NCBI GenBank assembly: GCA_024137785.1
Contig: JAHRHZ010000282.1
Span: forward strand, 124,001-188,000
Length of the DNA: 64,000 nt
Direction of reading: 5' to 3'
DNA from: Ginglymostoma cirratum
Taxonomy: Eukaryota
The notes beneath the pieces are model-generated. The model saw nothing but the letters and a program-made list of their open reading frames with translations. It ran no database searches and was not told the origin of the DNA. Positions 6,322-64,000 of the stretch are shown piece by piece. A program made the position numbers and the translations under genes. Position 1 is the stretch's first letter; each line of letters starts with the position of its first letter.

Positions 6322-6459
6322 NNNNNNNNNNNNNNNNNNNNNNNNNNNNNNNNNNNNNNNNNNNNNNNNNNNNNNNNNNNNNNNNNNNNNNNNNNNNNNN
6401 NNNNNNNNNNNNNNNNNNNNNNNNNNNNNNNNNNNNNNNNNNNNNNNNNNNNNNNNNNN
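6322..6459. other. Assembly gap (138 N)
   Basis: Run of N. Confidence 1.
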
Positions 6460-7304: not shown

Positions 7305-8010
7305 TTAACTTACTGACTATTTTGGCATCGTTTCGTTAAAAAAGCATTCTATCCAAATGCAGCATCCAATACCTTTGGGCTGTGGCTGCAGGGGATCTAC
7401 AGTTATAGTTCTTGATCTAATGTGGAGACATATTCCCAACGTTTCCGCATCACTGTTTCTTTCCCTGTATTCTGTCCGTGTGTGCAATATCCATGTTGTC
7501 CTGGTTTACATAGTCACTTATTGTTCTGTCTTGTTCACTGTCGCTTTCACTTTTGATATATTTGTGGTCATTTTTTGTCAAAAGCTGAACTGTAAATCAT
7601 GCACTATGAAAACAGCAGTTGTGCTTCTAGTTACAGTGACTGTATTGAACTGCATCAAACTCATTTTCTGGTATTTTGTGTTAATGTATGAGGATTGGTT
7701 GGAAAACATTCCTTGGTTTTGTGGTGGAATAATTGATATTCTTGAACCTCCTATTTCAGGTTCAATAGTTTCCTTCATCACATTCTAAGTCCTGTGATTC
7801 CATTTGTCCTCATTCTCTTGTTCAATTCTTTAACTATTATACATAATTTGGTGACAAGCAGAGCCCACAAGGAACTGCAAAGTCAGAGCAGGGAGGGCAT
7901 TGCCAGCAATCCAGAGTTGGAAATCCGAAGGAAATCTATTATTATCCTATTTGTCATCTCAGGGAATTTCATCCTGTTATGGACAGCTTCTGCCACATTG
8001 ATTGCCCCAT
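7305..8010 (+). pseudogene. GPR139-like class A GPCR pseudogene, main exon, 3'-truncated
   Basis: Acceptor ttctttgcag|; VNLLTIL..., VCNIHVVLVYIVTYCSVLFTVAFTFDIFVVIFCQKL (TM3/DRY region), IPFVLILLFNSLT, RRKSIIILFVISGNFILLW; stops and frameshifts. Confidence 0.8.
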
Positions 8011-9169
8011 TGTATCAATATAAATGTACATTGTCAGCTGTTGACAAGTATAACTGAAACAACCGCTAAAACAATTTGGAAATAATAATATTAGTATTAT
8101 TGTCATTAATAATAATTGTAACAACATCAACGACGACAACAACAATGACCTGAGTCGCCTGCAATGTTGTTTGCTATGCACCTTCCCGTACGACACAGTG
8201 GTGGTGACATTGTTAATTGTGGGCCTCATAGCAGTTTTAACATCAAAACTTTTGAAGTGTGGTTCCAGTCGTGGCACACGAATTGTGGTAAATATCGAGC
8301 ACAAAACGAGCACCAAATGAATAGTAATTTGATAATATCTCGATAAATCATGAGTTAAGATATTCAAGAGGAGAGTAAGTTCCATGAGTTTAGCATCTCC
8401 TTTGAAAAGTGACATAGAAATCGACACTGAAGCAACAAATGCTTGAGATTACAGCGAGTAAGACAGCATCGACAGAGAGGGAAGAAGCTAACGCTTTAGT
8501 ACGCATGACACTTCATCAGAGCTGAAGTGAAGTCTGGACGGGGGCATCATTAATGTTACAGTTTGAGGAGTTGGAAGTGGGGGGTGAAGAATGCTTCAGA
8601 GAAAGGAAGTGGATAGTTCAGATTAAGCGGTTGGTATGTGGGAATGGCAGAAGAATGGATTGTCTAACTGATAGACTTGAAGGGGAAGACAGTCACACTG
8701 GAGTGGGAGGAGGGGAGAGAGGACGTAGCAACAGAGAATGTAACAATTGAAACTAAAAGAAAGGGAAGAAATGGGAGAATGTAACAAGTAAAACCAATTT
8801 AAATGGGAGTTAGTTCATAATTTGAAGGCGTTGAACTCAATATTATGTCCAGAAGCCTGTAAATTGCATAATCTGAAGATGTGATCATAGTGGGAATATG
8901 ATGATCGTTCTTCTGGAGACTGAAAACTACAGTTTGAAACATTTTTCCGCCGCATTCTGTGATTATATCGGTGAGTAAGAGTATGCCCGAAACTCAGATT
9001 TGACAGTGAGTGAGTGAAAGCATGCTAGTGTGTGAAAAAAATTTGTGAGTGACAGAGTGTATGGGTGTATGAGAAATACTGGAAATGAGAGAGTTTATAA
9101 TGAATATCATGCTTTTGACAGAGTGATTGTGCATGTGAGTGAGATTTTGAATATGAGAGAATGCATGAG

Positions 9170-9427
9170 TTTGACCGAGAAAGGAAAAAGAAATAAAGAG
9201 TGAAAGAAAGAGAAGAAGAACGAAAGGAATAAATGAAGGAAGAGAGGAAGAAAGAAAGAGAGAAAGAACAAACGTGAGAAAGAAAGGAAGAGAGGAGAAA
9301 GAAATTTAAAGGGAGAGAAAGAAAGAGAAAGAAAGACAGCAAGAGAGAAAGAGGGAAAGACGGAAAGAAAGAGAGAAAGAAAGAAAGAGAGAGAAAGAAA
9401 GAGAGAAAGACGTAAAGAAAGAAATAA
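9170..9427. repeat. GA-rich polypurine low-complexity tract
   Basis: Seen directly; source of spurious ORF 9025-9450. Confidence 0.9.
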
Positions 9428-14650: not shown

Positions 14651-14993
14651 TTTTTTCTTACTGCTGTCTCTGCTCTCTGCATTGCCGTATCTGTAATCCT
14701 CACTCCGTGAAGGTTTTTGTAAGGCTGTTTCAATGATTTTTATTATGGCGTCGTAATCTCCATTGTGTTCATGTTTTTATACAACTTTGTCCATGCCCTG
14801 TATAATTTTGTCGGCAATTCCAATTCTGTTCAGGTTTTTGTACAGCTCTCTTCGTGCTCTGTATTACTGTGTCGTAATCGCCAATTTGTTCATGTGTTTT
14901 TGCAGCTGTCTCCATGCTCTGTATCATTTTGTCTGCAATTCCCATTCTGTTCAGGTTTTTTGTACTGCTCTGTCCGTGCTCTCGATCACTGTG
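14651..14993 (-). repeat. Tandem array of about six ~60-62-bp units derived from a 23-RSS
   Basis: Nonamer-like blocks end at 14659, 14720, 14780, 14841, 14901, 14963; each is followed by a related 23-bp spacer and a heptamer position; linkers alternate, giving a ~121-bp higher-order period. Confidence 0.8.
14955..14993 (-). promoter_or_regulatory. 23-RSS of supporting Vdelta
   Basis: CACAGTG (14993-14987), 23-bp spacer, ACAAAAAAC (14963-14955). Confidence 0.95.
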
Positions 14994-15303
14994 TCTGCTG
15001 CGCGCCGACCCAGTGCGCAGTAATACACCGCAGAGTCACTCAGTTGTAATGTGGAGATCTTTAGTCGACTGATTTTTGCCGAGGAGTCAATAGCAGCAGA
15101 AATTCTGCCTCCAGCTGCATGTTCTTTATTCTGCTCTCCTGATGTGTAACTCTGAAGCAGGTATTTCAGACCGTCTCCTGGGGACTGACGGTACCAGTAA
15201 ACGGTGTACTGACAGAATCCTGAATATTCACAACTTAAAGTAACAGTCTCACCGGTAACAGAGGTTTGTACAGCTGGACTGCGGGACACCAGGGACGGGG
15301 AAT
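14994..15303 (-). CDS. NAR-TCR supporting TCR delta V segment (leaderless, extra CDR1 Cys), open frame
   Basis: Acceptor ttccacag|AT TCC; DSPSLVSRSPAVQTSVTGETVTLSCEYSGFCQYTVYWYRQSPGDGLKYLLQ...LKISTLQLSDSAVYYCALGRRAA; canonical C, WYRQ, YYC; no leader exon or donor seen in the ~300 bp upstream; phase matches the J donor at 20513. Confidence 0.92.
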
Positions 15304-16259
15304 CTGTGGAATTAAAAAAAAGGTTTTTTCGCACTGACTATGACAGAAACTTGGCAATCAGCTAAACACTTCTGATACTAAGATACTTTTCTTAATTTGA
15401 CTCTGTGTTGGGATTGTCTTTCTCATAATTAACGAAATAATGTTGAAATTTTGCAATTTCTGGTTGTTGACATTGCGTTGTCATGATTTGGCTGAAAGGC
15501 CAGAATGGGTTAGGAGAGTTCAGAATCTGGACTAACACTCAAGCCGTTGTTGGAAACGCACTAGAACAGGGAATGATCCATGAGACCAGGCAAATGTAAC
15601 AGAATCGGAAAACAAACTTGTGCTTTTTCTAAGTATTTGCACCTGCACTACGGACAGTGTGGTAACCAGATGTGCTGTCTGCTTCCATCCATTGTATTAA
15701 AGTCTTCTTGTGTATTTCTGGTGAAATGTGCATCTGGGAAAATATTTTAATCGGTTATTATCCTCCTCACGAAGAAGATCAGTTTCCAGAATTGTTTGAC
15801 AGACGAAAACCTCTGCTGTGGTACATCACTAAGATCCAACAAATCGTCGTAAAACTCATCCACAGTAATTGACCTGGATGGGCGGTATGTATTTGCACGT
15901 CAGAGTATCAGGGAATAGAGTCATTCAGCCTGGCGTGCACATGCTGCCTGTCTGAATGAGGAATTCATTGACGACCACTTCCTACTCTCTACCAGCAGCC
16001 TTACACATTCTTCATTCTAAAGTAATTATCCAATTTCCTCTTGAACACCTTGATCAAGTTTGCCTTTCCATGCTAAACTGTTATGATCTGGAAATACATG
16101 CGAGATCATAACCATTCACCTTGAAATTCATTTTCCTGAAGTCACCATTATCAGTTCTGTTCATGAGTACGTTTTTGTTCCTGAACTTTCCACCAATGGC
16201 AGCAGTTTCACTTTATCTGCTCTGTTCAGACTCCTCATGGTTTTGAATACCATCATCAG

Positions 16260-16790
16260 GTAGAAAGGATGTGAACTCTTTGGAGCAGGTATACAAACAG
16301 TTTACCAAGATGTTGCCTCGTATGGGTGATTTTAGCTATGAAGAAAGTTTGGCTGGGTTGGGTTTGTTTTCATTGGAACATAGAAGGTTAAGGTACGAAT
16401 TCACAGACGATTTTTTATGATGATGAAGAGCATGGATAGAGTGGAAAGTATGTGGCTTTTTCCCAGGGTAGAGGTATCAGTTACTAGGAGTCACAAGTTG
16501 ATGGTCTCGGGGTTTGGGGGGCGTGGGCGGTGGGTGGTGTATTTAAAAAAGATATGCGTGGCAAGTTTTTCGCTCAAAAGGTGGAGAATACCTGGATTGC
16601 GCTGCCAGAGGAGATGGTGAAAGCAGACGCAATAGCAGAATTGAAGAAGCACCTGAACAAATACATGAATAGGAAGGGAATAAAGGGATACAAATCCTGT
16701 GTGTGAAGACAGTTTTAGTATGGAAGGGTAAAATGTCTAGGCACAGGCTTAGAAGGCCTAAGGGGCCGTTCCTTTGCAGCATTATTCTTT
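16260..16790 (+). mobile_element. CR1-type LINE 3' fragment, degenerate
   Basis: Typical CR1 ORF2 C-terminal coding remnants (tttagctatgaagaaag...ttttcattggaacatagaagg) and 3' tail. Confidence 0.65.
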
Positions 16791-18236
16791 GTGCTGAGTC
16801 CATTCTTTTTCTCAAACTTCCATTCTTGAAGAAAAATAATCCCAACGTCTTCAATTCATCTCTCTCTCTCCGATCTCTCTGGACCGTAAGATCATTCTTG
16901 TGGATTCTGCATGCTCTTTCGTTTCTTCACTTTCAACCCAAAGGGCGTTGTGCAGAACCTGACAAAATATTCTCGCTGGCGTCAAAGCATGTTCGACAGA
17001 TTTACACAATTTCTTTGAATTTTGCCATCAATGTCCCTCTTAATAAAACTTACGAAACTGTATACGTTATTTTGTAACCTCTCATGACGCTTATACTGTA
17101 CTGGAGCTCCAGGCTACCTTTGCAACTATGTGTCTTTTCATAAATCGGGGAGGCAATCTTGGTCGATTTCACTTTCCTGAGTATCTTTGAAGTATTTTCG
17201 TTTCAAAATCTATATCTGTCACTTTGTGATATTTATTTGTTATTTTCCATCTTGTGAATTGGTCCCGAAGCCTTGCAATTAGCGTTTGGGCTCAGCCAGT
17301 GCAATTTACACTGTGGTTTCACCGCCACTGAGAACTAGGTTCTCAGGGTGTCTGACAATTTCAAGTCCGTTGGTGGATTGATGAACTGTTATCCTTGTTT
17401 TCTGGCAAAGTGTTCTCTGAGATTTGCATCTTTTGGAATCTGCAGATCAGGTACAGCTCATTGCGTGGAATTGTCTACGCCTGTTCTTGTACTCTGCAAA
17501 TGCCTTCTCCATCCTGAATTGCAACCAACACTTTTATACCTCATTCCTGTTTCCTTCTATTCCCTTCCACTTTCCCTTCTCTATTTTGAAACGATTCCAT
17601 CACCAAATTGAGGAATTTGGCCCAAACACTGCACATGTTAGGCAGCTCCATATTCTGATCTGTTTGTGGACAAATGCATTCCTCCGAATATTTCTATCTG
17701 CTGTGTCGGCGCTGACATGCATTGTACAGCACTTTATTCCAGAGCGACATATGGAGGAAGACATGTCATCACATGGATTTCATTCGGCCTTTAGCCCAAG
17801 GTCAAGAATTTCTATGGAACCTCTTCATACTGCCCGACTTTCGAGAGGAGACGCAGGCTGTTAAACTTTCTAAATTATGTTTAATTCTGCTCAACTTTTT
17901 ATTCAGTGGGATAAAAAAAAATCAAAGCTGATGGTGCAAAAGTATATAAATACTGAATAAGAGAGGCCATACCTCCCTTAAATAGGGCCATAAAATTGAG
18001 GAATATCAGGGCTGCTGATCTTCACATTATGTTCCGTGGTCTTTCCAAATGCATTGACCTCCTTCATATTCAAACATCTAGCAAAACGTGTGGGACACTC
18101 ATTAGATCCCTGAAGAGCTGCACACACTTTAATTAAGTCAATCTATTTTTTTTTCTAAGTTATGATTAATGTAATACAAACCAGTGTACTACTATATATA
18201 TCTATGGCCCGACACCGATCAGTTGATCTTCGACAT

Positions 18237-19190
18237 CATAGAGTCTTAGAGATGTACAGCATGGAAGCAGATTCTTTGGTCCAACTCGTCCATTCCGACT
18301 AGGTGTCCTAAATTAATCAGTTACTATTTGACAGCATTTGGCCCATATTCCTCTCAACTCTACCTGTTCATATAGCCGTCTTGATGCTTTTTAAATGTTG
18401 TAATTGTACCAGGCTTCACCACTTCCTCTGGCAATTCATTCCTGACATGCATAAACCTGTGGGTGAAAAATTTGCCCCTGAGGTCCTTTCTAAATCTTTC
18501 CTCTCTCACTTTCGACCTATGCCTTCTAGTTTCAGACTCCCTTACCCCAGGGATAAGACTTTGACTATTTACCCTACCTATGCCCCGCTTGACTTTGTAA
18601 AGTTCTGTACGGTAGCCCTTCAACATCAGATGATCCGTGGAAATTAGTTTCAGCCGATTCAGCCTCTCTTTATACTCCAAACTCTCAACCCTGGCAACAT
18701 CCTTGTAAGTCTTTTCTGAACCCTTTTACATTTCACGACATCTTTCCTACAGCAGTGAGAGCATAACTGAATGCAGTATTCCAAAAGTGACCTAACCAAC
18801 ATCATGTACAGCTGCAACGTGACCTCTCAACTGCCGTACTTAATGCACCGACCAATGAAGGCAAACATATCAAACGCCTTCTTCACTGCACTGTCTACTT
18901 CCGACTACGATTTCAAAGAAACATGAACCTGCACTCCAAGTTCTCTTTGTTCAGCCGGACTCCTCAGGTCTTTACAATTAAGTGATAAACCTGCTCTGAT
19001 TTGCCATACTAAAATGCTGAACGTCACTTTTATCTATGTTAAACTCCACCTTCCGTTCCTTGATCCATCGAACCGTGGGATCACGGTCCCGTTGTGTTCT
19101 GAGGTAACCTTTTTCGTTGTCCACTACATTACCAATTTTGGTGTCACCTGCATTTTACTCCCCAGACCTGCTGTGTTCACATTCAATATA
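18237..19190 (-). mobile_element. CR1-type LINE 3' fragment inside the NAR J to supporting V intron
   Basis: YKERLNRLKL...ETRRHRSKVREERFRKDLRGKFFTHRFMHVRNELPEEVV is a typical CR1 ORF2 C-terminus. Confidence 0.8.
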
Positions 19191-20512
19191 TATATATGTG
19201 TAAAACAAGCTGAAAGGAAACCTTCCATCTCGACCCTTTGACCTGAATATCTGAGCAGCTTGTTGTGAAAGGAAGAACTAAAACAAAACACAAGATATTT
19301 GCAAATGACTCATGTTCAAGGTTATTTCGCGTCTGTAGTTGCACAATTGCATAATTGGTCTGTTCGGACAAACAATGGATAAATATGTCTCCTGTTTACA
19401 TGACTCTCAGATGAATGAGCTTAGAGCTCTGACAGTCTTGTTCAAAAAGGCATGAAATCGAACACACTGGAAGACTGGAAAAGAAACATATAAAAAAGGC
19501 ACATCGGAGACGCCTACAGTGACAAATCCAGCAGCATCTTGAAACTAACCATCACAAAGCGGAGACCCTGAATTCGAAACTCAGAGAAGACTAAGACTTG
19601 TTGGACTGAAACTAGCCAGTTCATCACACAGGGGCAGGGATCTAGATTATAGTCAAACCGTTGGGTATTGTGTTGTCTGTACGCTTTCTAGCAATTAAAG
19701 AGTTAAACAAAAAAAAAAGCGTAGTTGTATGAGTTTCTAATTTGGCTGTTTGAGCTTTGTGACAAACTTCGAGATCCCAGCAGAAGAAAGGTCAACACCA
19801 TTATCTCGAGCATTAATATTCACTATGGGTCGTGTGTCTGCAGTCGCACATTTCGGTCGAAAGGAGGGAAGAAAGGAAATGATTGCTTATATTAAAGCAA
19901 TTGAAAGAAATGCTAGGAAAATAAAACTAAATTCAGTCACTGACTGCCCCAAAATGAAATTTCACCAGGATTACAACCATTATCTCCGAAGCCCAATTGT
20001 CATTTCCTAGACTTTGTGTCCCTCCAGATCTCATATAAATTACTGCAGAGCAAAAATGCATTTCCTGGTGCCTCATTGCCATTGATAGGATCTGACAGAG
20101 ATCCTTTGCACAGAAGTGAACTCTTTGATTCCGCTCCTTTTTTCACAGGAAAGTCCAACTCAACTCGTGTGAGTGGGAGTTAGAAGTTTTTTTAACCTGA
20201 GTCAATTTAAAACAATTAAAATTGAATGACCGTGAGAGACTGGGATGCTGGTTTTATCATCTGATGTCCCCTTTAGACCAAGGATATACCAGATCGGGTC
20301 AACTCAACCTATTCTGTCTTGACTCCGGTTTCACTCCCAGACCTGACTAATGCTACTAATTCTGCTCTCAAATCTAAAATTGCAATTAAAGCTTTCCTTT
20401 GAAAACTTTGCTTTGATGAACTTGTGTTGAAGAACGACAGACCAAAGGAATACCATGACAGTACCCAGTTTCCTGGGCAGTGTCGAATACATTGGGGTTT
20501 GGAGTCACTTAC

Positions 20513-20565
20513 CGGCTGTGACAGTCACCTCTGTCCCGGACCCATCCACAGTGTCATAGTGTAAC
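20513..20565 (-). CDS. NAR-TCR J segment
   Basis: LHYDTVDGSGTEVTVTA with NAR-type DGxGT motif; phase-1 donor GCCG|gtaagt; RSS on its 5' side. Confidence 0.92.
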
Positions 20566-20604
20566 CACAGTGACACCATTCTCAGACACACCAACGCAAA
20601 AACT
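20566..20604 (+). promoter_or_regulatory. 23-RSS of NAR-TCR J
   Basis: CACAGTG 20566-20572, 23-bp spacer, GCAAAAACT 20596-20604. Confidence 0.9.
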
Positions 20605-20942
20605 ACTGGCACTCCAATCTCCTGGGCGAAAATCACTAGTCGGCTCTGCTTGATTATCGAGGAGATTTGAATCACTATACTCGATTCCAAATTTGACATA
20701 ACACATCATTTCAAGCTGTTCTTGGGGAAACTCTAAAATCTTCACGACACGATCGAAGAAGACGAACAGGGGATGACCTCTTTGTAGAAATTGGGAACAA
20801 TGTTAAAGAACTGTAATAGAAGTCAGAAAATTGAATAAAATTAAACAAGGACACGGATATCTACCAATACACGATTGGGTACGGGTCCACAGAATCTGCA
20901 TTTTAGTTGTACATGATATACGATCAGCTCTCATTCACTGTG

Positions 20943-20958
20943 AATTCCCATAAATTCA
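20943..20958 (-). CDS. NAR-TCR D segment (16 bp, TGAATTTATGGGAATT)
   Basis: Flanked by two perfect opposed heptamers (20936-20942, 20959-20965). V-facing 12-RSS has nonamer ACCAAATCT (20978-20986); J-facing nonamer is weak. Lies roughly midway between V and J. Confidence 0.85.
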
Positions 20959-21300
20959 CACAGTGTTTCCACTCAGTACCAAATCTCCTAATATTACTCA
21001 GATATGGAATCTTTGCTTAAACAGCGGCTCCAGTTGCCAGCTTCTGAACTGGATTCCTTCCAGTATCTGTGACTCCTGATTGGGATCAGTTATTCCCAAC
21101 ATTGCTGCACTGACAACGATCCCACAAAAGACACCACCATCAGGCCACTCAGCATTTACGATACTGAAGATAATAACAGCGACATTCCAGTTCGAATATA
21201 AGCAGAACCGTGGAGCAGGCATTGAGAGGTGAAAGTGTGGGGTGTTCAGGGCAGATGGACTATGGATTTTCACATGTTTCTGTGTTAATTTACAGAGAGA

Positions 21301-21339
21301 GCTTTTTTGTGTCACGGGAAGCTGAGCCCCATCATTGTG
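21301..21339 (-). promoter_or_regulatory. 22/23-RSS of NAR-TCR V
   Basis: CACAATG (21339-21333) plus ACAAAAAAG (22-bp spacer) or CAAAAAAGC (23-bp spacer). Confidence 0.85.
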
Positions 21340-21801
21340 TCTCATAGCTGTACTCTGCGTTACAATAATAGGTGGCGGTGTCTTCAACTTTCACATCCCG
21401 AATTTCCAGCGAAAATGTCTTTTCTGCTTTATTTATCCTCACATCAAACCTCTCCCCTGCCGAGATCCGCTCCCGCTCTGATCCTGTCTGGCTTTGTTTG
21501 AAGAAACCCCCTCCAGTTAAAGGCCGACGGAAGAAGCCACCATAGAAAACACAGTCGATGATGAGAGACTGGCACTCTTTCGTGGCTACCGCTGGCGGCG
21601 TCTGTACCACTGACTGACTGAAAGATCCTGAAAATTAAAGAAAGGTACATTAATGGGCTTTAAGTTACCTGGACCAGCCACAACGCCTGCTTTTTTAATG
21701 GAAAGGGGGAGCTTTATGCAAAATGCCCACAACGTTATGTTGCTTGATTCGTACTTACGGTGTAAATAGGCACACAGTATGAAGATCAGAACAAGTCCCA
21801 T
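21340..21801 (-). CDS. NAR-TCR V segment (IgNAR-like V); leader exon 21801-21759, V exon 21627-21340, open frame
   Basis: MGLVLIFILCAYLH|RSFSQSVVQTPPAVATKECQSLIIDCVFYGGFFRRPLTGGGFFKQSQTGSERERISAGERFDVRINKAEKTFSLEIRDVKVEDTATYYCNAEYSYE; lacks the CDR2 region as IgNAR V does; extra FR1 Cys; GT-AG phase-1 intron. Confidence 0.92.
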
Positions 21802-21828
21802 TTTGCTATTGTCTGGTGCAACACATGA

Positions 21829-21981
21829 TTTATATGAACCGGGAGCTGGAAGCTGCTTTCGGACAGGGTCTCAGAGCTGGACTGAAATACAGCAGAATTA
21901 TTGCGTTCATTTGCAAAGGGCACTGTCCTTTATCCGATGTGAAATCCCCTCCTACATTAGTCTGACGTACAGGGGGCGGGA
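21829..21981 (-). promoter_or_regulatory. Putative NAR-TCR V promoter
   Basis: TATAAA (21834-21829), octamer-like TTGCAAAT (21916-21909, 1 mismatch), CRE-like TGACGT at ~21963, GC box at ~21972. Confidence 0.45.
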
Positions 21982-25950: not shown

Positions 25951-26144
25951 CAAATGGACCCCTGAGATGAACATTTCGCGCGTAGAAATAACTGTAAGGA
26001 TGTTAATCGATAATTTCTAACTCAAGCTCACTTCTCAAATGTATCAAATTGCTTCAAAATCCTGTAGAACAATTCTCATATTTATAAGTCTCAGATTCTT
26101 TCTTTTCTGCTTTCCAGATATCTGTATGTATGTTTGTACGACAG

Positions 26145-27045
26145 CTCACCTGACAGTGATTGTTATCCTTTCCAGAAGAAAACGTGATCTTTCTCGTCTC
26201 GACATTTATTGCCTGGTGTCTATGGCAGTGGTCGATCTGCTCATGGTAAATGCTGTATTCCGAAACCAGATTGCTGGAATTTGCTTCCCATCAAATTTGT
26301 TGTTCATTACTCCAGTATGCACTCTCCGTGATGCTATAATCTACACTGCTGTTGATTGTTCAGTATACTTAACGGTTGCTTTCACCATTGATCGACTTAT
26401 GGCCATTTGTTGTCAGATGGTGAACTTCTGCATGGGATGGAAAGTGGCACTGCTTATTGGATTCGTCACAACACTCAGATGCATAAAAATGCCTTTATTT
26501 TTCAAATTAATTAACCTATCAACATAATTAATAATGTACCCCGGCTCTGCAAAATAAAATTAATATTTTATACGTCAGGTACTTGGGCAGAATATGACTG
26601 GATTCGCAGTATTTTGACCATTTGTCTCCCATTCATTCTGATTTTAATGCTCAACGCTCTCACTGTCAGATATATTGTACTGGCGGATAAAGCCCGCAGA
26701 AGACGCCAAACTCAGACTATTAGAGAAAATCAGAGAGGCCTGGAAATGGAAAAGCGCAAAACGTCCATGGTTTTCCTCTTTGCCATCTCAGGCAGCTTCA
26801 TTCTGTTATATTCTTTATTTTTCATAGAAACATTCCATGCCCAAATTACGAACGTACCTTATTTCTCAGATTTCAACTTAAGTCAGACAGAGTTCATTTA
26901 ACAGGAAAGTGGGTACTTGCTTCAGTTTATGAGTTCCTGCATCAACCCTTTTAATTATGTTCGGACCCAGAGTGAAATAAGAGCTGAGTCAAAGAATGGG
27001 TTGAAATATCCACTGGGACTCCTTATGAGATTGTGTAAGCATTGA
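26145..27045 (+). pseudogene. GPR139-like GPCR pseudogene, near-complete main exon
   Basis: acag|AHLTVIVILSRRKRDLSR...LVSMAVVDLL...TPVC...DCSVYLTVAFTIDRLMAICCQ...CLPFILILMLNALTVRYI...EMEKRKTSMVFLFAISGSFILL...SSCINP; frameshifts and stops. Confidence 0.85.
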
Positions 27046-36929: not shown

Positions 36930-37037
36930 TTAGCTCCCGTCTTCTGAAACAGTTCAGTCAAGTAGTACAGACTTACCATCTCGCAGCTATTATCACCTGA
37001 CTCTGCGGTCTATCACTGTGCAATGAGTCTCACATTC
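36930..37037 (+). pseudogene. 3' fragment of a TCR V segment
   Basis: NSSVK*YRLTISQLLSPDSAVYHCAMS followed by degenerate heptamer CACATTC. Confidence 0.65.
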
Positions 37038-38123: not shown

Positions 38124-38631
38124 TCTCTCAGCACACAGTAATACACAGCACTGTCAGACAGTCGTAGGTCACCAATGGTGAAATTCCCCTCACTTTTCGA
38201 AGTGTCCGGAGCTGCAGAAAATCTATTTCACAAGCCATCAGATCTGAGAACATTTCCAGATTGAAGGATGTAGATCAATAGTGTCGGTGATTTACCCAGG
38301 TCTTGCCGGTACAAATTAAAGGAATATGAAGTAGCTATTTTGATCGAATAGCTAAAGTTAATGTTCACCGACTGTCCTTCAAGCTGTTTTGCTGTAGCTG
38401 GTCCCTGTGAAATCGAATCTGCACAATTCACTTCTACGGAAATTTAAACAGAAAATAAAACTGAGTCTGAAATTACCGTCTTGTTCAATAATGTCATCAA
38501 GATAAGAGAACATTTTGCAGGTGAGGTCACTACGTAAGTATAATGTACAAGGCAACGTTTTGCGTCTTGGTCAACTTACCAGTGAAGAGAACTGCAGCTG
38601 TGGTTAATGCATAAAATGTAACAGCTGACAT
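38124..38631 (-). pseudogene. TCR alpha/delta V with a single in-frame stop (leader 38631-38580, V exon 38433-38124)
   Basis: MSAVTFYALTTAAVLFT|EVNCADSISQGP...SVNINFSYS...NLYRQDLGKSPTLLIYI...DGL*NRFSA...GNFTIGDLRLSDSAVYYCVLR; 23-RSS CACAGTG (38123-38117) / GCAAAATCA (38093-38085); TGA at 38230-38228. Confidence 0.88.
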
Positions 38632-38834: not shown

Positions 38835-40186
38835 AGAGATAGTAGCAACTGCAGATGCTGGAGAATCTGAGATAACAAGGTGTAGAGCTGGATGAACACA
38901 GCAGGTCAAGTAGCATCAGAGAAGCAGGAAGGCTGATATTTCGGGCCTGGACACTTCTTCAGAAATGGGGGAGGGGAAGAGGGTTCTGAAATAAATAGGG
39001 AGAGGGGGGAGGCAGATAGACGATGGATAGAGGAGAAGATAGGTGGAGAGGAGGCAGACAAGTCAAAGAGGCGGGGATTGAACCATTAAAGGTGATTGTA
39101 GGTGGGGAAGTAGGGAGGAGATAGGTCAGTCCAGGGAGGACGGACAGGTCAAGGGGGCGGTATGAGTTTAGTAGCGAGGAGATAGGGGTGCAGCTTGAGG
39201 TGGGAGAAGGGGATAGGTGGGAGGAAGGGCAGGTTAGGGAGGCGGGGACGAGCTGGGTTGCTTTTGGGATGCGGTAGAGGGAGGGGTGATTTTGAATCTT
39301 GTGAAGTCCACATTGATACCATTGGGCTGCAGGATTGCCAAGCGGAATATGAGTTGCTGTTCCTGCAACCTTCGTGTAGCATCGCTGTGGCACTGTAGGA
39401 GGCCCAGGAAGGACATGTCGTCTGCGGAATGGGAGGGGTAGTTGAAATGGTTGGCGACTGGGAGGTGCAGTTGTTTAGTGCGAACCGAGCGTAGGTGTTC
39501 TGGAAAGCAGTCCCCAAGCCTCCGCTTGGTTTCCCCTATGTAGAGGAGGACACAACTGGAGCAGAAGATGCAGTATACCACATTAGCAGATGTGCAGGTG
39601 AACATCTGTTTGATGTGGAAAGTCTTCTTGGAGCCTGGGATGGGGGTGAGGGGGGAGGTGCCACAACGATGCTAAACGAAGGTTGCCGGAACAGCAAGTC
39701 ATATTCTGCTTGGGAAACCTGCAGCCCAATGGTATCAATGTGGAATTTACAAGCTTCAAAATCTCCCCTCCCTCTACTGCATCCCAAAACCAGCCCAGGT
39801 CGTTCCCACCCGACTAACCTGTACTTCCTCCCACCTATCCCCTCCTCCCACCTCAAGACCCACCCCCATCTCCTACCTCCTAACATGATCCCGCCCCCTT
39901 GACCTGTCCGTCCTCCTGGACTGACCTATCTACTTCCTACCTCCCCACCTGCACTCACCTTTACTGGCTCCATCCCCGCCTCTTTGACCTGGCTGTCTCC
40001 TCTCCATCTATCTTCGCCTTTATCCATGTTCTGTCTGCCTCCCCCTCTCTCCCTATTTATTTTAGAACCCCATTCCCCTCCCCCATTTCTGAAGAAGGGT
40101 CTCGGCCCGAAACATCAGCCTTCCTGCTCCTCTGATACTGCTTGGCCTGCTGTGTTCATTCAGCACTACACCAATTTGTTCTCCAG
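38835..40186. mobile_element. Penelope-like element fragment forming an inverted repeat (GIY-YIG endonuclease end)
   Basis: Minus ORF CTSANVVYCIFCSSCVLLYIGETKRRLGDCFPEHLRSV; arms ~38870-39393 and ~39658-40180 are reverse complements. Confidence 0.85.
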
Positions 40187-40894: not shown

Positions 40895-41172
40895 GAGCTG
40901 AACGCACAGTGATCAATGGCAGAGTCAGATACAAGAGCACAGTTGACTTTTACAGGAACCGTTTTCTCTTCTTCAGCCAAATAAGTAGAAAACCGATTTG
41001 GGAAGTGAGGAGACTTATCAACCCGTTCCTACTTGAATTTCCTCAGTAAATATGTCAGAGCTTTCCTGGTACACTCGACGTATCAGAAGGAAATTGGTAC
41101 ACTGTATTTTGCCGTTTAACTGCGATTTGATACATCCGTTTGTCTTTTCTGAACGACTCCTTCAGGCGAGTC
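40895..41172 (-). pseudogene. TCR V pseudogene
   Basis: RKALTYLLRKFK*...FPNRFSTYLAEEEKTVPVKVNCALVSDSAIDHCAFS; RSS CACACAG, 23 bp, GCAAAAATC (40894-40856). Confidence 0.75.
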
Positions 41173-43403: not shown

Positions 43404-43707
43404 GGTCTCAGAGTGCAGGAATACAATGCGGAGTCTATCAGTTCTGTCTTAAGTACAATCACCAGGATAGTACGATTCACATGACCAAACACCGAATACA
43501 GCCGGTCTCCTGGAAATCTCTATGTGTTCCCAACATATATGCTTCTCTGTAGCAGATACTCCACGGATCCTCTGGGGTTCTGACGGTACCAGAACAAATA
43601 AGGATGATTGTCTTCTGTGGTGTAATGACATCACTATTGGATATCGTCTCTCTCATTCACTTTGATATTAGCTGTTGTCTGTGAGACGGAATCTCCTCGA
43701 AACTGTC
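43404..43707 (-). pseudogene. TCR alpha/delta V pseudogene
   Basis: QFRGDSVSQTTANIKVNERDDIQ**CHYTTEDNHPYLFWYRQNPRGSVEYLLQR...ELIDSALYSCTLRP; RSS CACTGCG, 23 bp, ACAGAAACT (43403-43365). Confidence 0.85.
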
Positions 43708-46007: not shown

Positions 46008-46046
46008 GGTTTTTGTGTGGACTCTCCATTTATTGGTGACACTGTG
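46008..46046 (-). promoter_or_regulatory. Consensus 23-RSS
   Basis: CACAGTG, 23 bp, ACAAAAACC (both perfect). Confidence 0.95.
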
Positions 46047-46384
46047 CCCTCACTGGCACAAATGTAGATTGCAGTGTCATTAATCCTGGTCTCTCTCACA
46101 GTCAGTGTACTGGTTTTGTAGTCTCCACTGATTGAAGCGGTTACCCTCGTAGGCTGCTCGGCTTCTCTTCTGGCCATCACTAGATGCTCGGGTGGCTGAT
46201 TTGGGAGCTGTCTGTACCAACGCACTGTGGTAAATGTAGTAGCAGTAGTGGAGCAGTTCATGGACACCATTCCCATTTCACTAACAACCATCCACGGAGG
46301 AAGTTGCATCACTTTGACTTCTCCAGTCACGTCTACGGAGATGAGAGTGGAGAACAGCAAGAGAACTCCGCAAATTCGGAACAT
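46047..46384 (-). CDS. Intact TCR V segment with leader and V in one exon
   Basis: MFRICGVLLLFSTLISVDVTGEVKVMQLPPWMVVSEMGMVSMNCSTTATTFTTVRWYRQLPNQPPEHLVMARREAEQPTRVTASISGDYKTSTLTVRETRINDTAIYICASEG; uninterrupted ORF up to a perfect RSS. Confidence 0.9.
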
Positions 46385-61349: not shown

Positions 61350-63440
61350 GAAACAATAACAAGATAACAAGGTATGGGGCTGAATGAACACAGCAGGCCA
61401 AGCAGCATCATAGGAGCAGGAAAGCTTGACGTTTCGGGCCGAGACCCTTCATCAGAAATGGGGGAGGGGAAGAGGGTTCTGAAATAAATAGGGAGAGGGG
61501 GGAGGCGGATAGAGGAGAGGATAGGTGGAGAGGAGGCAGACAAGTCGAAGAGGCGGGGATGGAGCCAGTAAAGGTGAGTGTAGGTGGGGGTGGAGGGAGG
61601 AGATAGGTCAGTCCAAGGAAGACGGACAGGTCAAGGGGGCGGGATGATGTTAGTAGATAGGGGATGGGGGTGGAGCTTGAGGTGGGAGGAGGGGATAGGT
61701 GAGAGGAAAAACAGGTTAAGGAGGTGGAGATGAACTGGGCTGGTTTTGGGATGTGGTTGGGGGAGGGGAGATTTTGAAGCTTGTGAAATCCACATTGATA
61801 CCATTGGGCTGCAGGGTTCCCAGGCTGAATATGATTTGCTGTTCCTGCAGCCTTCGGGTGGCATCACTATGGCATTGCAGGAGCCCCGGGATGGACATGT
61901 CGTCTGAGGAATGGGAGGGGGAGTTGAAATGGTTCGCGACTGGGAGGTGCAGTTGTTTGTTGCGAACTGAGCGCAGGTGTTCTGCAAAGCGGTCCCCAAG
62001 CCTCCGCTTGGTTTCCCCGATGTCGAGGAAGCCACAACGGGTACAGCGGATGCAGTATACCACATTGGCAGATGTGCAGGTGAACATCTGCCTGATGTGA
62101 AAGTCTTCTTGGGGCCTGGGTTTGGAGTGAGGGAGGAGGTGTGGGGGCAGGTATAGCACTTCCTGCGGTTGCAGGGGAAAGTGCTGGGTGTGGTGGGGCT
62201 GGAGGGGAGTGTGGAGCGGACAAGGGAGTCGCGGAGGGAGTGGTCACTCCGGAAGGCAGATAAGGGTGGGGAGGGAAAAATGTCTTTGGTGGTGGGATCA
62301 GATTGCAGATGGCGGAAGTGTCGGAGGATGATGCGTTGGATCCGGAGGTTGGTGGGATGGTACGTGAGGATGAGTGGGATTCTTTTTTGGTTATTATTGC
62401 GGGTACGGGGCGTGAGGGATGAGTTACGGGAAATGCGGGAAACATGGTCGAGGGCGTTCTCGACCACTGTTGGGGGAAGTTGCGGTCCTTGAAGAATGAG
62501 GACATCTGAGATGTACAGGAGTGGAATGTCTCATCCTGGGAGCAGATGCGGCGGAGGCAAAGGAATTGAGAATAGGGGATGGCATTTTTGCAGGAAGGTG
62601 GGTGGGCAAAGGTGTATTCCAGGTAGCTGTGGGAGTCAGTGGGCTTGAAATGGACATCGGTTTCTAGGTGGTTACCCGAGATGGAGACAGAGAGGTCCAG
62701 GAGGGAGAGAGAAGTGTTGGAGATGGTCCAGGTGAACTTCAGGTTTGGGTGGAAGGTGTTGGTGAAGTGGATGAACTGTTCGAGCTCCTCGTGGGAGCAC
62801 GAGGCGGCGCCGATGCAGTCATCAATGTAACGGAGGAAGAGGTGGGGTTTAGGGCCAGTGTCGGTACGGAAGAGGGATTGTTCCACGTAACCTACAAAGA
62901 GGCAGACATAGTTTGGGCCCATGCGGGTACCCATGGCCACCCCCTTTGTCTGTAGGAAGTGGGAGGAATTGAAAGAGAAATTGTTGAGAGTGAAGACGAG
63001 TTTGGCTAAGTGGATGAGGGTGTCGGTGGAGGGGGATTGATCAGTTCTGCGGGACAGGAAGAAGCGGAGGGCCTTTAGGCCATCTGCATGGGGAATACAG
63101 GCATATAGGGACTGGACGTCCATGGTAAAAATGAAGTGTTGGGGACTGGGGAATTGGAAGTTCTGGAGGAGGTGGAGGGCGTGGGTGGTGTCACGGACGT
63201 AGGTAGGGAGTTCCTGGACCAAGGGGGTGAAAATGGAGTCTAGGTAGGTGGAGATGAGTTCGGTGGGGCAGAAGCAGGCGGAGATAATGGGTCGACCAGG
63301 GCATTCAGGTTTGTGGATTTTGGGAAGGAGATAGAAGCTGGCAGTGCGGGGTTGGGGAACGATGAGGTTGGAGGCGGTGGGTGGGAGGTCACCTGAGGTG
63401 ATGAGGTTGTGGATGGTTTGGTGCTCGGGGGTGGGTATTT
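61350..63440 (-). mobile_element. Penelope-like retroelement, 5'-truncated, RT plus GIY-YIG endonuclease, frameshifted
   Basis: FYLLPKIHKPECPGRPIIS, TMDVQSLY, QTKGVAMGT, LRYIDD; then VVYCIRCTRCGFLDIGETKRRLGDRFAEH. Confidence 0.92.
61427..61455 (-). ncRNA. Minimal hammerhead ribozyme motif at the Penelope 3' end
   Basis: CTGATGA-AGGG-TCTCGG-CCC-GAAA-CGTC-A on minus strand. Confidence 0.65.
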
Positions 63441-64000
63441 TTCGGTGATGCTCATGAAATGGGGACCTGCAATTGCGCAAATTCATGACAGAATTTTACA
63501 TTTTACACAATGTTACCTGTCCTTCAGAAAATACCACTTGCACTGAGTCATACCTTGGGTTGTGCTGAAGTGGTAGAACGTGTTGTTCACTGCCATAGAA
63601 CAGAGGCAGAGTTTTACCAGTCACCATGCCAAAGTCTGATATTTGAAAGAATTGGTTAGATAGATACACACCTTGACATTTTACCCAAAAGTTGGCCTTA
63701 TGATGTATTTATTGAACTCCAGTTTGAATTTTACTGGTCAATTCCGGCTTCCAGTACGACAGCAGATTCGATAACAAGTTTAATTTATTTTAAAACAAAG
63801 GAATTTCCATTTCAATCAATATTCTATTTCGACAAAAGGTTTAAAAAAAAACTATTTCTGCAGTGTGTGAAAGAGTTCTGGAAAAGTAATACCGATCCAG
63901 ACCTTGAAAACGAACTTCTCATGTTGTTCTTGCATGAGGAACCTTCGAAATCATTCAGTCTAAATCAAAGAAAGTATATCTCTCATAATGCCACACTCCT

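What the first reader, a model, noticed from the sequence alone, without database searches (positions are those of the whole stretch)
14955..21801. Complete, apparently functional NAR-TCR cassette (double-V T-cell receptor delta chain)
Seen: L, IgNAR-like V, D, J and a leaderless TCR V in the same orientation, all frames open. The J donor (phase 1) splices in frame across a 5.2-kb intron to give ...EVTVTA-D-SPSLV.... Established: sharks make NAR-TCR chains in which an antibody-like NAR V, built by its own VDJ event, sits on a supporting Vdelta that rearranges to Ddelta/Jdelta. Inference: this copy is expressible. The class of system is known; this copy may be unannotated.
Basis: partly seen in the sequence, partly recalled or inferred. 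Interest (0 to 1): 0.8.

Follow-up and report, generated by a model that had tools for sequence, protein, structure and literature searches.

The report
Expressed shark NAR-TCR double-V cassette
This is an intact germline copy of the known cartilaginous-fish NAR-TCR gene unit, an antibody-like V-D-J set spliced onto a leaderless T-cell-receptor delta V, and public RNA contigs show the predicted splice, so it is real but ordinary for this locus.

Summary

- **Parts found:** a leader exon, an IgNAR-like V exon with an RSS, one D, one J ending in a phase-1 splice donor, a 5,209-bp intron, and a leaderless V exon with a 23-RSS.
- **Diagnostic residues:** the N-terminal V has a Cys in the a-b loop and no Trp. 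Its best solved-structure matches are VNARs. The second V starts at a splice acceptor and has a CDR1 Cys.
- **Expression:** contigs from two public runs, in two studies, carry the exact joint 20513|15303 (GT..AG). In one run a contig leaves the germline 8 nt inside J. Another leaves it 3 nt before the Vdelta heptamer. This points to somatic rearrangement and expression of this copy.

The system has been known since 2006, and the scan's first readers noted three more cassettes nearby in the same genome, so novelty is low.

**Minor oddities:**
- J carries a 23-spacer RSS, which is the IgH-like layout.
- The D 3' RSS has a perfect heptamer but no recognisable nonamer.
- The Vdelta RSS heads a 246-bp tandem array of RSS-like units.

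I could not determine the species or whether this copy is annotated.

The parts
21802..21930 (-). Putative promoter: TATAAAT at 21834-21828 and a 7/8 octamer-like TTGCAAAT at 21916-21909
   Evidence: Read from the sequence. Consensus resemblance only; not tested.
21759..21801 (-). Leader exon (MGLVLIFILCAYLH + 1 nt, phase 1), donor C|GTAAGT
   Evidence: hydrophobic 9/10, donor ACC|GTAAGT.
21628..21758 (-). Leader intron, 131 nt, GT..AG
21340..21627 (-). NAR-type V exon. Cys18 (21574-21572) in the a-b loop, canonical Cys25 and Cys88, no Trp (GGFFKQ in place of WYRK).
   Evidence: Pfam V-set E=5.4e-08. Best PDB matches are VNARs, E=9e-14 to 1e-11, nearly full length. Relatives P0001 and P0002 share KECQSL and FFKQ/FFRQ.
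21302..21339 (-). V RSS: CACAATG, 22-nt spacer, ACAAAAAAG
20959..20986 (-). D 5' RSS: AGATTTGGT, 12-nt spacer, CACTGTG
20943..20958 (-). Single D segment, TGAATTTATGGGAATT (frames *IYGN / EFMGI / NLWE)
   Evidence: No other heptamer pair lies between V and J.
20915..20942 (-). D 3' RSS: perfect heptamer CACAGTG (20942-20936); the nonamer is not recognisable at a 12 or 22-24 spacer (4/9 at best)
20566..20604 (-). J RSS: AGTTTTTGC, 23-nt spacer, CACTGTG
   Evidence: 2 mismatches to consensus.
20513..20565 (-). J segment (...LHYDTVDGSGTEVTVTA + 1 nt), donor G|GTAAGT, phase 1
   Evidence: The donor is used in RNA contigs.
15304..20512 (-). J-to-Vdelta intron, 5,209 nt, GT..AG. It contains interspersed repeats at about 16170-16770 and 18170-18970.
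   Evidence: Joint 15303|20513 'skips 5209, CT..AC' in X1 and X2. Repeat bins reach depths of up to 13,797.
14994..15303 (-). Leaderless supporting V (TCR alpha/delta type). Canonical Cys24 and Cys95, Trp36, extra CDR1 Cys30 (15214-15212).
   Evidence: V-set E=1.2e-18. No in-phase leader within 700 nt upstream. Relatives P0003 and P0004 (Callorhinchus milii) keep YSGIC/YSGFC. Exact-match RNA contigs (records 1, 9, 11).
14955..14993 (-). Supporting-V RSS: CACAGTG, 23-nt spacer, ACAAAAAAC
   Evidence: 1 mismatch.
14750..14995 (-). Tandem array of RSS-like units headed by the true RSS. Unit 3 is CACAGTA-23-ACAAAAACC at 14871-14833.
   Evidence: TRF: period 61, 4.1 copies, 73% matches; period 121, 2.0 copies, 84%..

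Best explanation
This is a germline, unrearranged NAR-TCR cassette inside a TCR alpha/delta V-gene region of a cartilaginous fish.

Proposed mechanism:
1. In developing T cells, RAG joins the NAR V (22/23-RSS) to the single D (12-RSS), and the D to the J (23-RSS).
2. In a separate event, RAG joins the downstream leaderless V (23-RSS) to TCR-delta D/J segments outside this window.
3. One transcript starts upstream of the leader. Splicing joins leader to NAR V, then the NAR J donor (20513) to the acceptor of the supporting V (15303), giving the split codon Asp. The delta J is then spliced to C-delta.
4. The product is a three-domain delta chain, NAR V - Vdelta - Cdelta. The a-b loop Cys of the NAR V probably bonds to the CDR1 Cys of the supporting V.

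Shown here: the anatomy, the diagnostic residues, the J-to-V splice in RNA-type contigs, and contigs that leave the germline inside J and at the end of the supporting V.

Inferred: the order of the joins, the partner D/J/C-delta, the disulfide, and antigen binding by an unpaired NAR V.
For: - Anatomy and open frames.
- Both exons are V-set.
- The NAR V is closest to VNAR structures, E=9e-14, with a nearly gapless alignment over residues 4-95. Camelid VHH and human VH score about 31 bits against 50-54 for VNARs.
- The a-b loop Cys is present, the exon has no Trp, the support V has a CDR1 Cys and no usable leader. This matches the definition given in PMC1845163.
- RSSs are enriched 7 against 1.06 expected and sit at the coding ends.
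- The spliced joint 15303|20513, with GT..AG on the coding strand, is in contigs of X2 (depth 6.4, 45 nt on the J side, 70 nt on the V side) and X1 (depth 33). These come from two studies.
- X2 record 11 is 449 nt long, but only 70+45 nt lie on the stretch laid. It therefore departs from the germline 8 nt into J.
- X2 record 9 matches 15263-14997 without a mismatch, then runs 63 nt off the germline 3 nt before the heptamer.
- Other TCR-type V segments lie on the same strand in the window.
- The doubly rearranging NAR-TCR model is described in the literature.
Against: - The tool only guesses that X1 and X2 are RNA.
- I could not see the letters of the off-germline parts of the contigs. So I did not show that they carry this cassette's NAR V, a delta D/J or C-delta.
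- The NAR V and leader were outside the 6,000 letters laid, so the L-V splice and V-D join were not observed.
- A polyA RNA-seq run (X6, tissue unknown, 24% read) had no reads on the exons.
- The D 3' RSS has no recognisable nonamer, which may lower D-J joining efficiency.
- No C-delta lies in the window.
Confidence: 0.9

Rival explanations
1. The cassette looks intact, but this copy is rarely or never used productively. On this reading the RNA contigs are mostly sterile germline or non-productive transcripts, because the D 3' RSS is defective.
For: - The D 3' RSS nonamer scores 4/9 at best.
- X1 holds the unrearranged J with its RSS and upstream DNA (record 7, 20513-20752), as well as parts of the intron, so germline transcripts exist.
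- X6 shows no exon reads.
Against: - X2 record 11 leaves the germline 8 nt inside J, and record 9 leaves it 3 nt before the V heptamer. Both are typical of processed coding joints.
- All frames and diagnostic cysteines are intact.
- A perfect heptamer is the main requirement for RAG cleavage (established knowledge).
Confidence: 0.08
2. It is an IgNAR (antibody) cluster, or a remnant of one, that happens to lie next to an ordinary TCR V gene.
For: The V is closest to VNAR structures. The J has a 23-RSS, as Ig heavy-chain J segments do.
Against: - There is only one D, where IgNAR has three.
- No constant exons follow the J.
- The J donor is spliced to the leaderless V.
- The V lacks the Trp that VNARs keep in the aligned position (alignments).
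- The V has the a-b loop Cys typical of NAR-TcR V.
Confidence: 0.01
3. These are two independent V segments: the NAR V-D-J rearranges or splices on its own, and the second V is a conventional Vdelta whose leader was missed.
For: A hydrophobic ORF (MSFTTICWILVMY...) starts at 15859, upstream of the second V.
Against: That ORF's only GT sites are poor donors and are out of phase with the V exon. The V exon starts exactly at an AG acceptor that RNA contigs join to the J.
Confidence: 0.01

Closest known systems
NAR-TcR of nurse shark (Criscitiello, Saltis & Flajnik 2006, PNAS 103:5036; cited; the paper itself was not held)
   Same: An IgNAR-related V with its own leader, D and J sits upstream of a dedicated leaderless supporting TcR-delta V. 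There are two separate V(D)J events. The paired extra cysteines (a-b loop and CDR1) are present. The NAR V has no Trp in the WYRK position.
   Different: No difference of kind was found. I could not compare RSS spacers, D number or intron size with the published cassettes. Here the J-V intron is 5.2 kb and enlarged by repeats, J has a 23-RSS, the D 3' nonamer is degenerate, and the support-V RSS is tandemly repeated.
Elephant shark (Callorhinchus milii) NAR-TcR V and associated TcR-delta V (PMC1845163)
   Same: The diagnostic residues are the same. The C. milii protein P0004 is 54% identical to the supporting V, keeps YSGFC, and shows no leader.
   Different: At only 54% identity, the window is not from C. 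milii.
IgNAR V domains (VNAR), e.g. PDB 8hgi_C, 1ves_A, 2z8w_C
   Same: These are the best sequence matches. The short V without a CDR2 region aligns almost without gaps.
   Different: IgNAR clusters have three D segments and IgNAR constant exons, and they keep the framework Trp. Here there is one D, no Trp, an extra a-b loop Cys, and splicing to a TCR V.
TCR-mu of marsupials and monotremes (PMC3457774)
   Same: A three-domain TCR chain with an antibody-like, probably unpaired, N-terminal V on a supporting V.
   Different: It is convergent. TCR-mu uses VH-related V domains, has its own locus, and is found only in mammals.

Membership tests
NAR-TCR cassette (NAR-TcR V + supporting TcR-delta V) | The N-terminal V has its own leader exon | tested here: met
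   Leader 21801-21759, 9/10 hydrophobic, GTAAGT donor, in phase with the V exon.
NAR-TCR cassette (NAR-TcR V + supporting TcR-delta V) | The N-terminal V is related to IgNAR V | tested here: met
   Seven of the eight best PDB matches are VNARs, E=9e-14 to 3e-12, nearly full length. No tree was built.
NAR-TCR cassette (NAR-TcR V + supporting TcR-delta V) | Cys in the a-b loop of the NAR V (PMC1845163) | tested here: met
   Cys18 in ATKECQSLIIDC, 21574-21572. It is conserved in P0001 and P0002.
NAR-TCR cassette (NAR-TcR V + supporting TcR-delta V) | No canonical Trp of the WYRK motif (PMC1845163) | tested here: met
   The V exon has no Trp at all. GGFFKQ aligns to the W-containing stretch of VNARs.
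NAR-TCR cassette (NAR-TcR V + supporting TcR-delta V) | Own D and J with RSSs between the NAR V and the supporting V | tested here: met
   V 22-RSS, D 5' 12-RSS, D 3' heptamer, J 23-RSS. Caveat: the D 3' nonamer is not recognisable.
NAR-TCR cassette (NAR-TcR V + supporting TcR-delta V) | The NAR J is spliced in frame to the supporting V exon | tested here: met
   Joint 15303|20513 with GT..AG in contigs of X1 and X2. The phase-1 split codon is G|AT.
NAR-TCR cassette (NAR-TcR V + supporting TcR-delta V) | The supporting V lacks a leader | tested here: met
   The exon starts at AG|A (15303). No in-phase leader lies within 700 nt upstream.
NAR-TCR cassette (NAR-TcR V + supporting TcR-delta V) | Conserved Cys in CDR1 of the supporting V | tested here: met
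   Cys30 in CEYSGFCQY. The same Cys is in P0003 and in C. milii P0004.
NAR-TCR cassette (NAR-TcR V + supporting TcR-delta V) | The supporting V rearranges to TCR-delta D/J and is expressed with C-delta | tested here: inconclusive
   A 23-RSS is present. X2 record 9 leaves the germline 3 nt before the heptamer. The off-germline letters were not shown, and no D/J/C-delta lies in the window.
NAR-TCR cassette (NAR-TcR V + supporting TcR-delta V) | Lies in the TCR alpha/delta locus | tested here: inconclusive
   One intact TCR-type V and several pseudogene V segments lie on the same strand in the window. No constant gene was seen. The first readers noted three further cassettes nearby.
IgNAR cluster | Three D segments between V and J | tested here: not met
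   Only one heptamer-flanked D lies between 21339 and 20566.
IgNAR cluster | J spliced to IgNAR constant exons | tested here: not met
   The J is spliced to a V exon 5.2 kb downstream.

The most novel reading that the evidence does not exclude
The RSS architecture of this cassette may be functional rather than incidental. It combines an IgH-like V23/12-D/23-J layout, a nonamer-less D 3' RSS, and a 4-unit tandem array of RSS-like sequences behind the supporting V. It could, for example, order or throttle the two V(D)J events, or supply back-up or decoy RSSs so that the supporting V stays available until the NAR VDJ is made.
Probability: 0.07. Interest if true: 0.5.

Novelty: already known. Interest (0 to 1): 0.3.

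Why it matters
NAR-TCR is the oldest known example of an antibody-type single V domain mounted on a T-cell receptor. It also bears on the shared origin of the Ig and TCR loci.

A cleanly delimited, expressed germline copy with exact exon, RSS and splice coordinates is useful in three ways:
- for annotating this genome's TCR alpha/delta locus;
- for repertoire mapping;
- for choosing natural VNAR-like scaffolds.

It does not change what is known about the system.

Tried and rejected
- **Word-index protein searches.** The two V exons, searched separately, gave only 2 and 3 relatives, none named as NAR-TCR. They confirmed the conserved cysteines but gave neither species nor annotation.
- **The look-up of encoding contigs.** It was closed, so the contigs of P0001 and P0003 could not be read.
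- **Metagenome scan with the supporting V.** It returned 54 loci of generic V genes at 28-50% identity, plus one 18-residue fragment at 89%. These are host DNA of unknown vertebrates, and some may be human. I did not open, compare or use them.
- **Key papers.** The 2006 PNAS paper and Ott et al. 2021 are not held, so published RSS layouts could not be compared.
- **Runs X6 and X7.** X6 (polyA RNA) laid reads only on the intronic repeats, and X7 laid none. With the tissue unknown, this is no test.
- **Tree.** I did not build a tree of IgNAR V, NAR-TCR V and Vdelta. No IgNAR or NAR-TCR sequences were available as stored proteins. I left out the large representative search because the PDB match and the diagnostic residues had already settled the family.
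- **Joined model.** Each exon was handled apart.
- **Rejected readings.** I rejected an IgNAR cluster, two independent V genes, and a second J heptamer (20553-20547) as the functional RSS. That heptamer has no nonamer, and the X2 contig keeps germline J sequence upstream of it.
Full report
**Observation**

- **Leader.** The leader exon runs 21801-21759 (MGLVLIFILCAYLH plus one base) and ends at C|GTAAGT. A 131-nt intron then ends in TTTTCAG|.
- **NAR-type V exon.** It runs 21627-21340 and is an open frame of 95 codons. It scores as a V-set domain, E=5.4e-08.
- **V RSS.** The exon is followed directly by CACAATG, a 22-nt spacer and ACAAAAAAG, at 21339-21302.
- **D.** A single 16-nt D (20958-20943) has a 5' RSS with a 12-nt spacer (20986-20959) and a perfect 3' heptamer (20942-20936). 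No other heptamer-flanked segment lies between V and J.
- **J.** The J (20565-20513...DGSGTEVTVTA) is preceded by AGTTTTTGC, a 23-nt spacer and CACTGTG (20604-20566). It ends at G|GTAAGT in phase 1.
- **Second V exon.** After 5,209 nt, a second V exon starts directly behind ...TTCCACAG| at 15303 and runs to 14994, V-set E=1.2e-18.
- **Its RSS.** It is followed by CACAGTG, a 23-nt spacer and ACAAAAAAC, at 14993-14955.

This is not chance. Matches to a 23-spacer RSS number 7 in the window against 1.06 expected, and 0 of 100 shuffles reach 7. They sit at the ends of V exons and in front of the J.

**What it is**

The features that define a NAR-TcR V and its supporting TcR-delta V are listed in PMC1845163, which summarises Criscitiello et al. 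2006.

For the NAR V they are a typical leader, a Cys in the a-b loop, and no Trp of the WYRK motif. For the supporting V they are no leader and a conserved Cys in CDR1. All are met here:

- Cys18 lies in ATKECQSLIIDC.
- The whole first V exon has no Trp; GGFFKQ stands where VNARs have W.
- Cys30 lies in CEYSGFCQY of the second V.
- No in-phase leader lies within 700 nt upstream of the second V. The one hydrophobic ORF there has only poor, out-of-phase GT sites.

Seven of the eight best matches of the first V among solved structures are shark VNARs (E=9e-14 to 3e-12), aligned over almost its whole length with very few gaps. Camelid VHH and human VH domains score far lower and match mainly the C-terminal half.

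The few relatives in the protein collection keep the same cysteines. P0001 and P0002 have KECQSL and FFKQ/FFRQ. P0003 and the Callorhinchus milii protein P0004 have YSGIC/YSGFC.

The rest of the window fits a TCR alpha/delta V region. On the same strand it holds an intact V with a perfect 23-RSS at 46384-46008 and several V pseudogenes.

**Expression**

I laid four public runs of the same organism on 14970-20969.

- **The splice.** Contigs of two runs from two different studies carry a joint from 15303 to 20513 that skips 5,209 nt. Its ends are CT..AC on the + strand, which is GT..AG on the coding strand. X2 shows it at depth 6.4 and X1 at depth 33.
- **Rearrangement at J.** X2 record 11 is 449 nt long, yet only 70 nt (Vdelta) plus 45 nt (J) lie on the stretch. 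It therefore leaves the germline 8 nt inside the J coding sequence, upstream of which the stretch would have matched an unrearranged copy.
- **Rearrangement at Vdelta.** X2 record 9 matches 15263-14997 without a single difference. It then runs 63 nt off the germline, 3 nt before the heptamer.

Both departures are what processed V(D)J coding joints look like, and the exact match ties them to this copy.

X1 also holds the unrearranged J with its RSS (record 7) and parts of the intron, so germline or nascent transcripts are present too.

Limits of this evidence:
- The tool only guesses that X1 and X2 are RNA. A GT..AG intron removal is itself the argument, as are depths of 6-33 in runs of 110-900 million letters.
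- I could not see the off-germline letters.
- The NAR V and leader lay outside the 6,000 letters allowed.
- A polyA run (X6, tissue unknown) had reads only on the intronic repeats, which is no test.

**Mechanism**

Shown:
- the anatomy;
- the diagnostic residues;
- the J-to-V splice;
- departures from the germline at the J and Vdelta coding ends.

Inferred from established knowledge:
- RAG assembles the NAR V-D-J.
- RAG separately joins the supporting V to delta D/J segments outside the window.
- One transcript is spliced leader-V, J-Vdelta and Jdelta-Cdelta.
- The chain carries an unpaired antibody-like V on a Vdelta-Cdelta stalk, probably fixed by a disulfide between the two extra cysteines.

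1. *RSS layout.* The J has a 23-spacer RSS. The NAR part therefore has the Ig-heavy-chain layout (V 23, D 12/12, J 23). It does not have the TCR-delta layout (V 23, D 12/23, J 12). Both layouts are stated from established knowledge. This layout requires a 12-RSS on the 3' side of D, yet no nonamer is recognisable there at any spacer, 4/9 at best.
2. *Tandem RSS array.* The RSS of the supporting V is the first unit of a 246-bp tandem array of RSS-like units at 14750-14995. TRF reports it at period 61 (4.1 copies) and period 121 (2.0 copies). One unit is a near-perfect second RSS at 14871-14833. No other V in the window has this. I have no explanation for it.
3. *Large intron.* The J-V intron is enlarged by interspersed repeats at 16170-16770 and 18170-18970, seen as very high depths. 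That would explain why this cassette spans 6.8 kb while the neighbouring ones noted by the scan span about 4.4 kb.
4. *Small points.* One D frame has a stop. The J motif is D-G-S-G, without an aromatic residue.

**Comparison and novelty**

This is the NAR-TCR system itself. It was described in nurse shark in 2006, found in elephant shark in 2007, and mapped as 'NARTCR V' in several cartilaginous-fish assemblies in 2025 (PMC12227049).

The scan's first readers noted three more cassettes in the same genome. They lie 24 kb before the window, and 38 kb and 88 kb beyond it. I did not check those.

The rivals are excluded as follows:
- **IgNAR cluster.** There is one D, no constant exons follow the J, and the J is spliced to a V.
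- **Two independent V genes.** The splice excludes this, as does the lack of any leader for the second V.
- **TCR-mu.** It is convergent, not related.

I rate the finding as already known in kind. It is not C. milii, since identity to P0004 is only 54%.

- Each exon was translated and searched apart.
- The 54 metagenome loci are generic V genes of unknown vertebrate hosts, and some may be human. I did not open or compare them.
- The large representative search was not run, because the family was already settled.

Noticed in passing
window 14750-14995 (-): The supporting V's RSS heads a tandem array of about four RSS-like 61-bp units, including a near-perfect second RSS, CACAGTA-23-ACAAAAACC, at 14871-14833. 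It is the only such array in the window, and I cannot explain it.
   Followed up: partly
window 20915-20942 and 20566-20604 (-): The D 3' RSS has a perfect heptamer but no recognisable nonamer. The J has a 23-spacer RSS. This is an IgH-like layout, not a TCR-delta-like one.
   Followed up: partly
window 46008-46384 (-): An intact V gene whose leader and V form one ORF with no leader intron. Its CDR2 region is short, and it has a perfect RSS, CACAGTG-23-ACAAAAACC (46046-46008).
   Followed up: partly
window 38129-38461 (-), 43409-43630 (-), 40900-41082 (-), 36948-37025 (+): TCR-type V pseudogenes or fragments with internal stops. The first keeps an RSS-like site at 38123-38085.
   Followed up: no
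window 26039-26901 (+) and 7357-8057 (+): Two pairs of ORFs in different frames. The 26-kb pair gives weak rhodopsin-type 7TM matches (7tm_1 E=1.5e-05 and 0.0035, below the Pfam cut-off); the 7-kb pair matched no Pfam family. They are probably broken or very divergent GPCR genes lying among the V segments.
   Followed up: partly
window 61631-63486 (-) and 38959-39902 (both strands): A retroelement with a weak reverse-transcriptase match (RVT_1 E=9.8e-05). Related fragments share the same C-terminal peptide motifs. It is a dispersed repeat family, and I did not determine its type.
   Followed up: partly
window 16170-16770 and 18170-18970: Interspersed repeats inside the J-Vdelta intron, with summed contig depths of up to 13,797 in the public runs. 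The 106-aa ORF at 18360-18680 (-) has no Pfam match.
   Followed up: partly
window 15152-15263: A second X2 contig (record 10) differs from the supporting V at 5 of 112 positions. Of the four listed, three are synonymous, and the CDR1 Cys codon stays Cys. It could be a close paralogue, an allele or somatic mutation.
   Followed up: no
window 6322-6459; 9178-9424: An assembly gap of 138 N, which I left untouched, and an AGAA microsatellite of about 62 copies.
   Followed up: no
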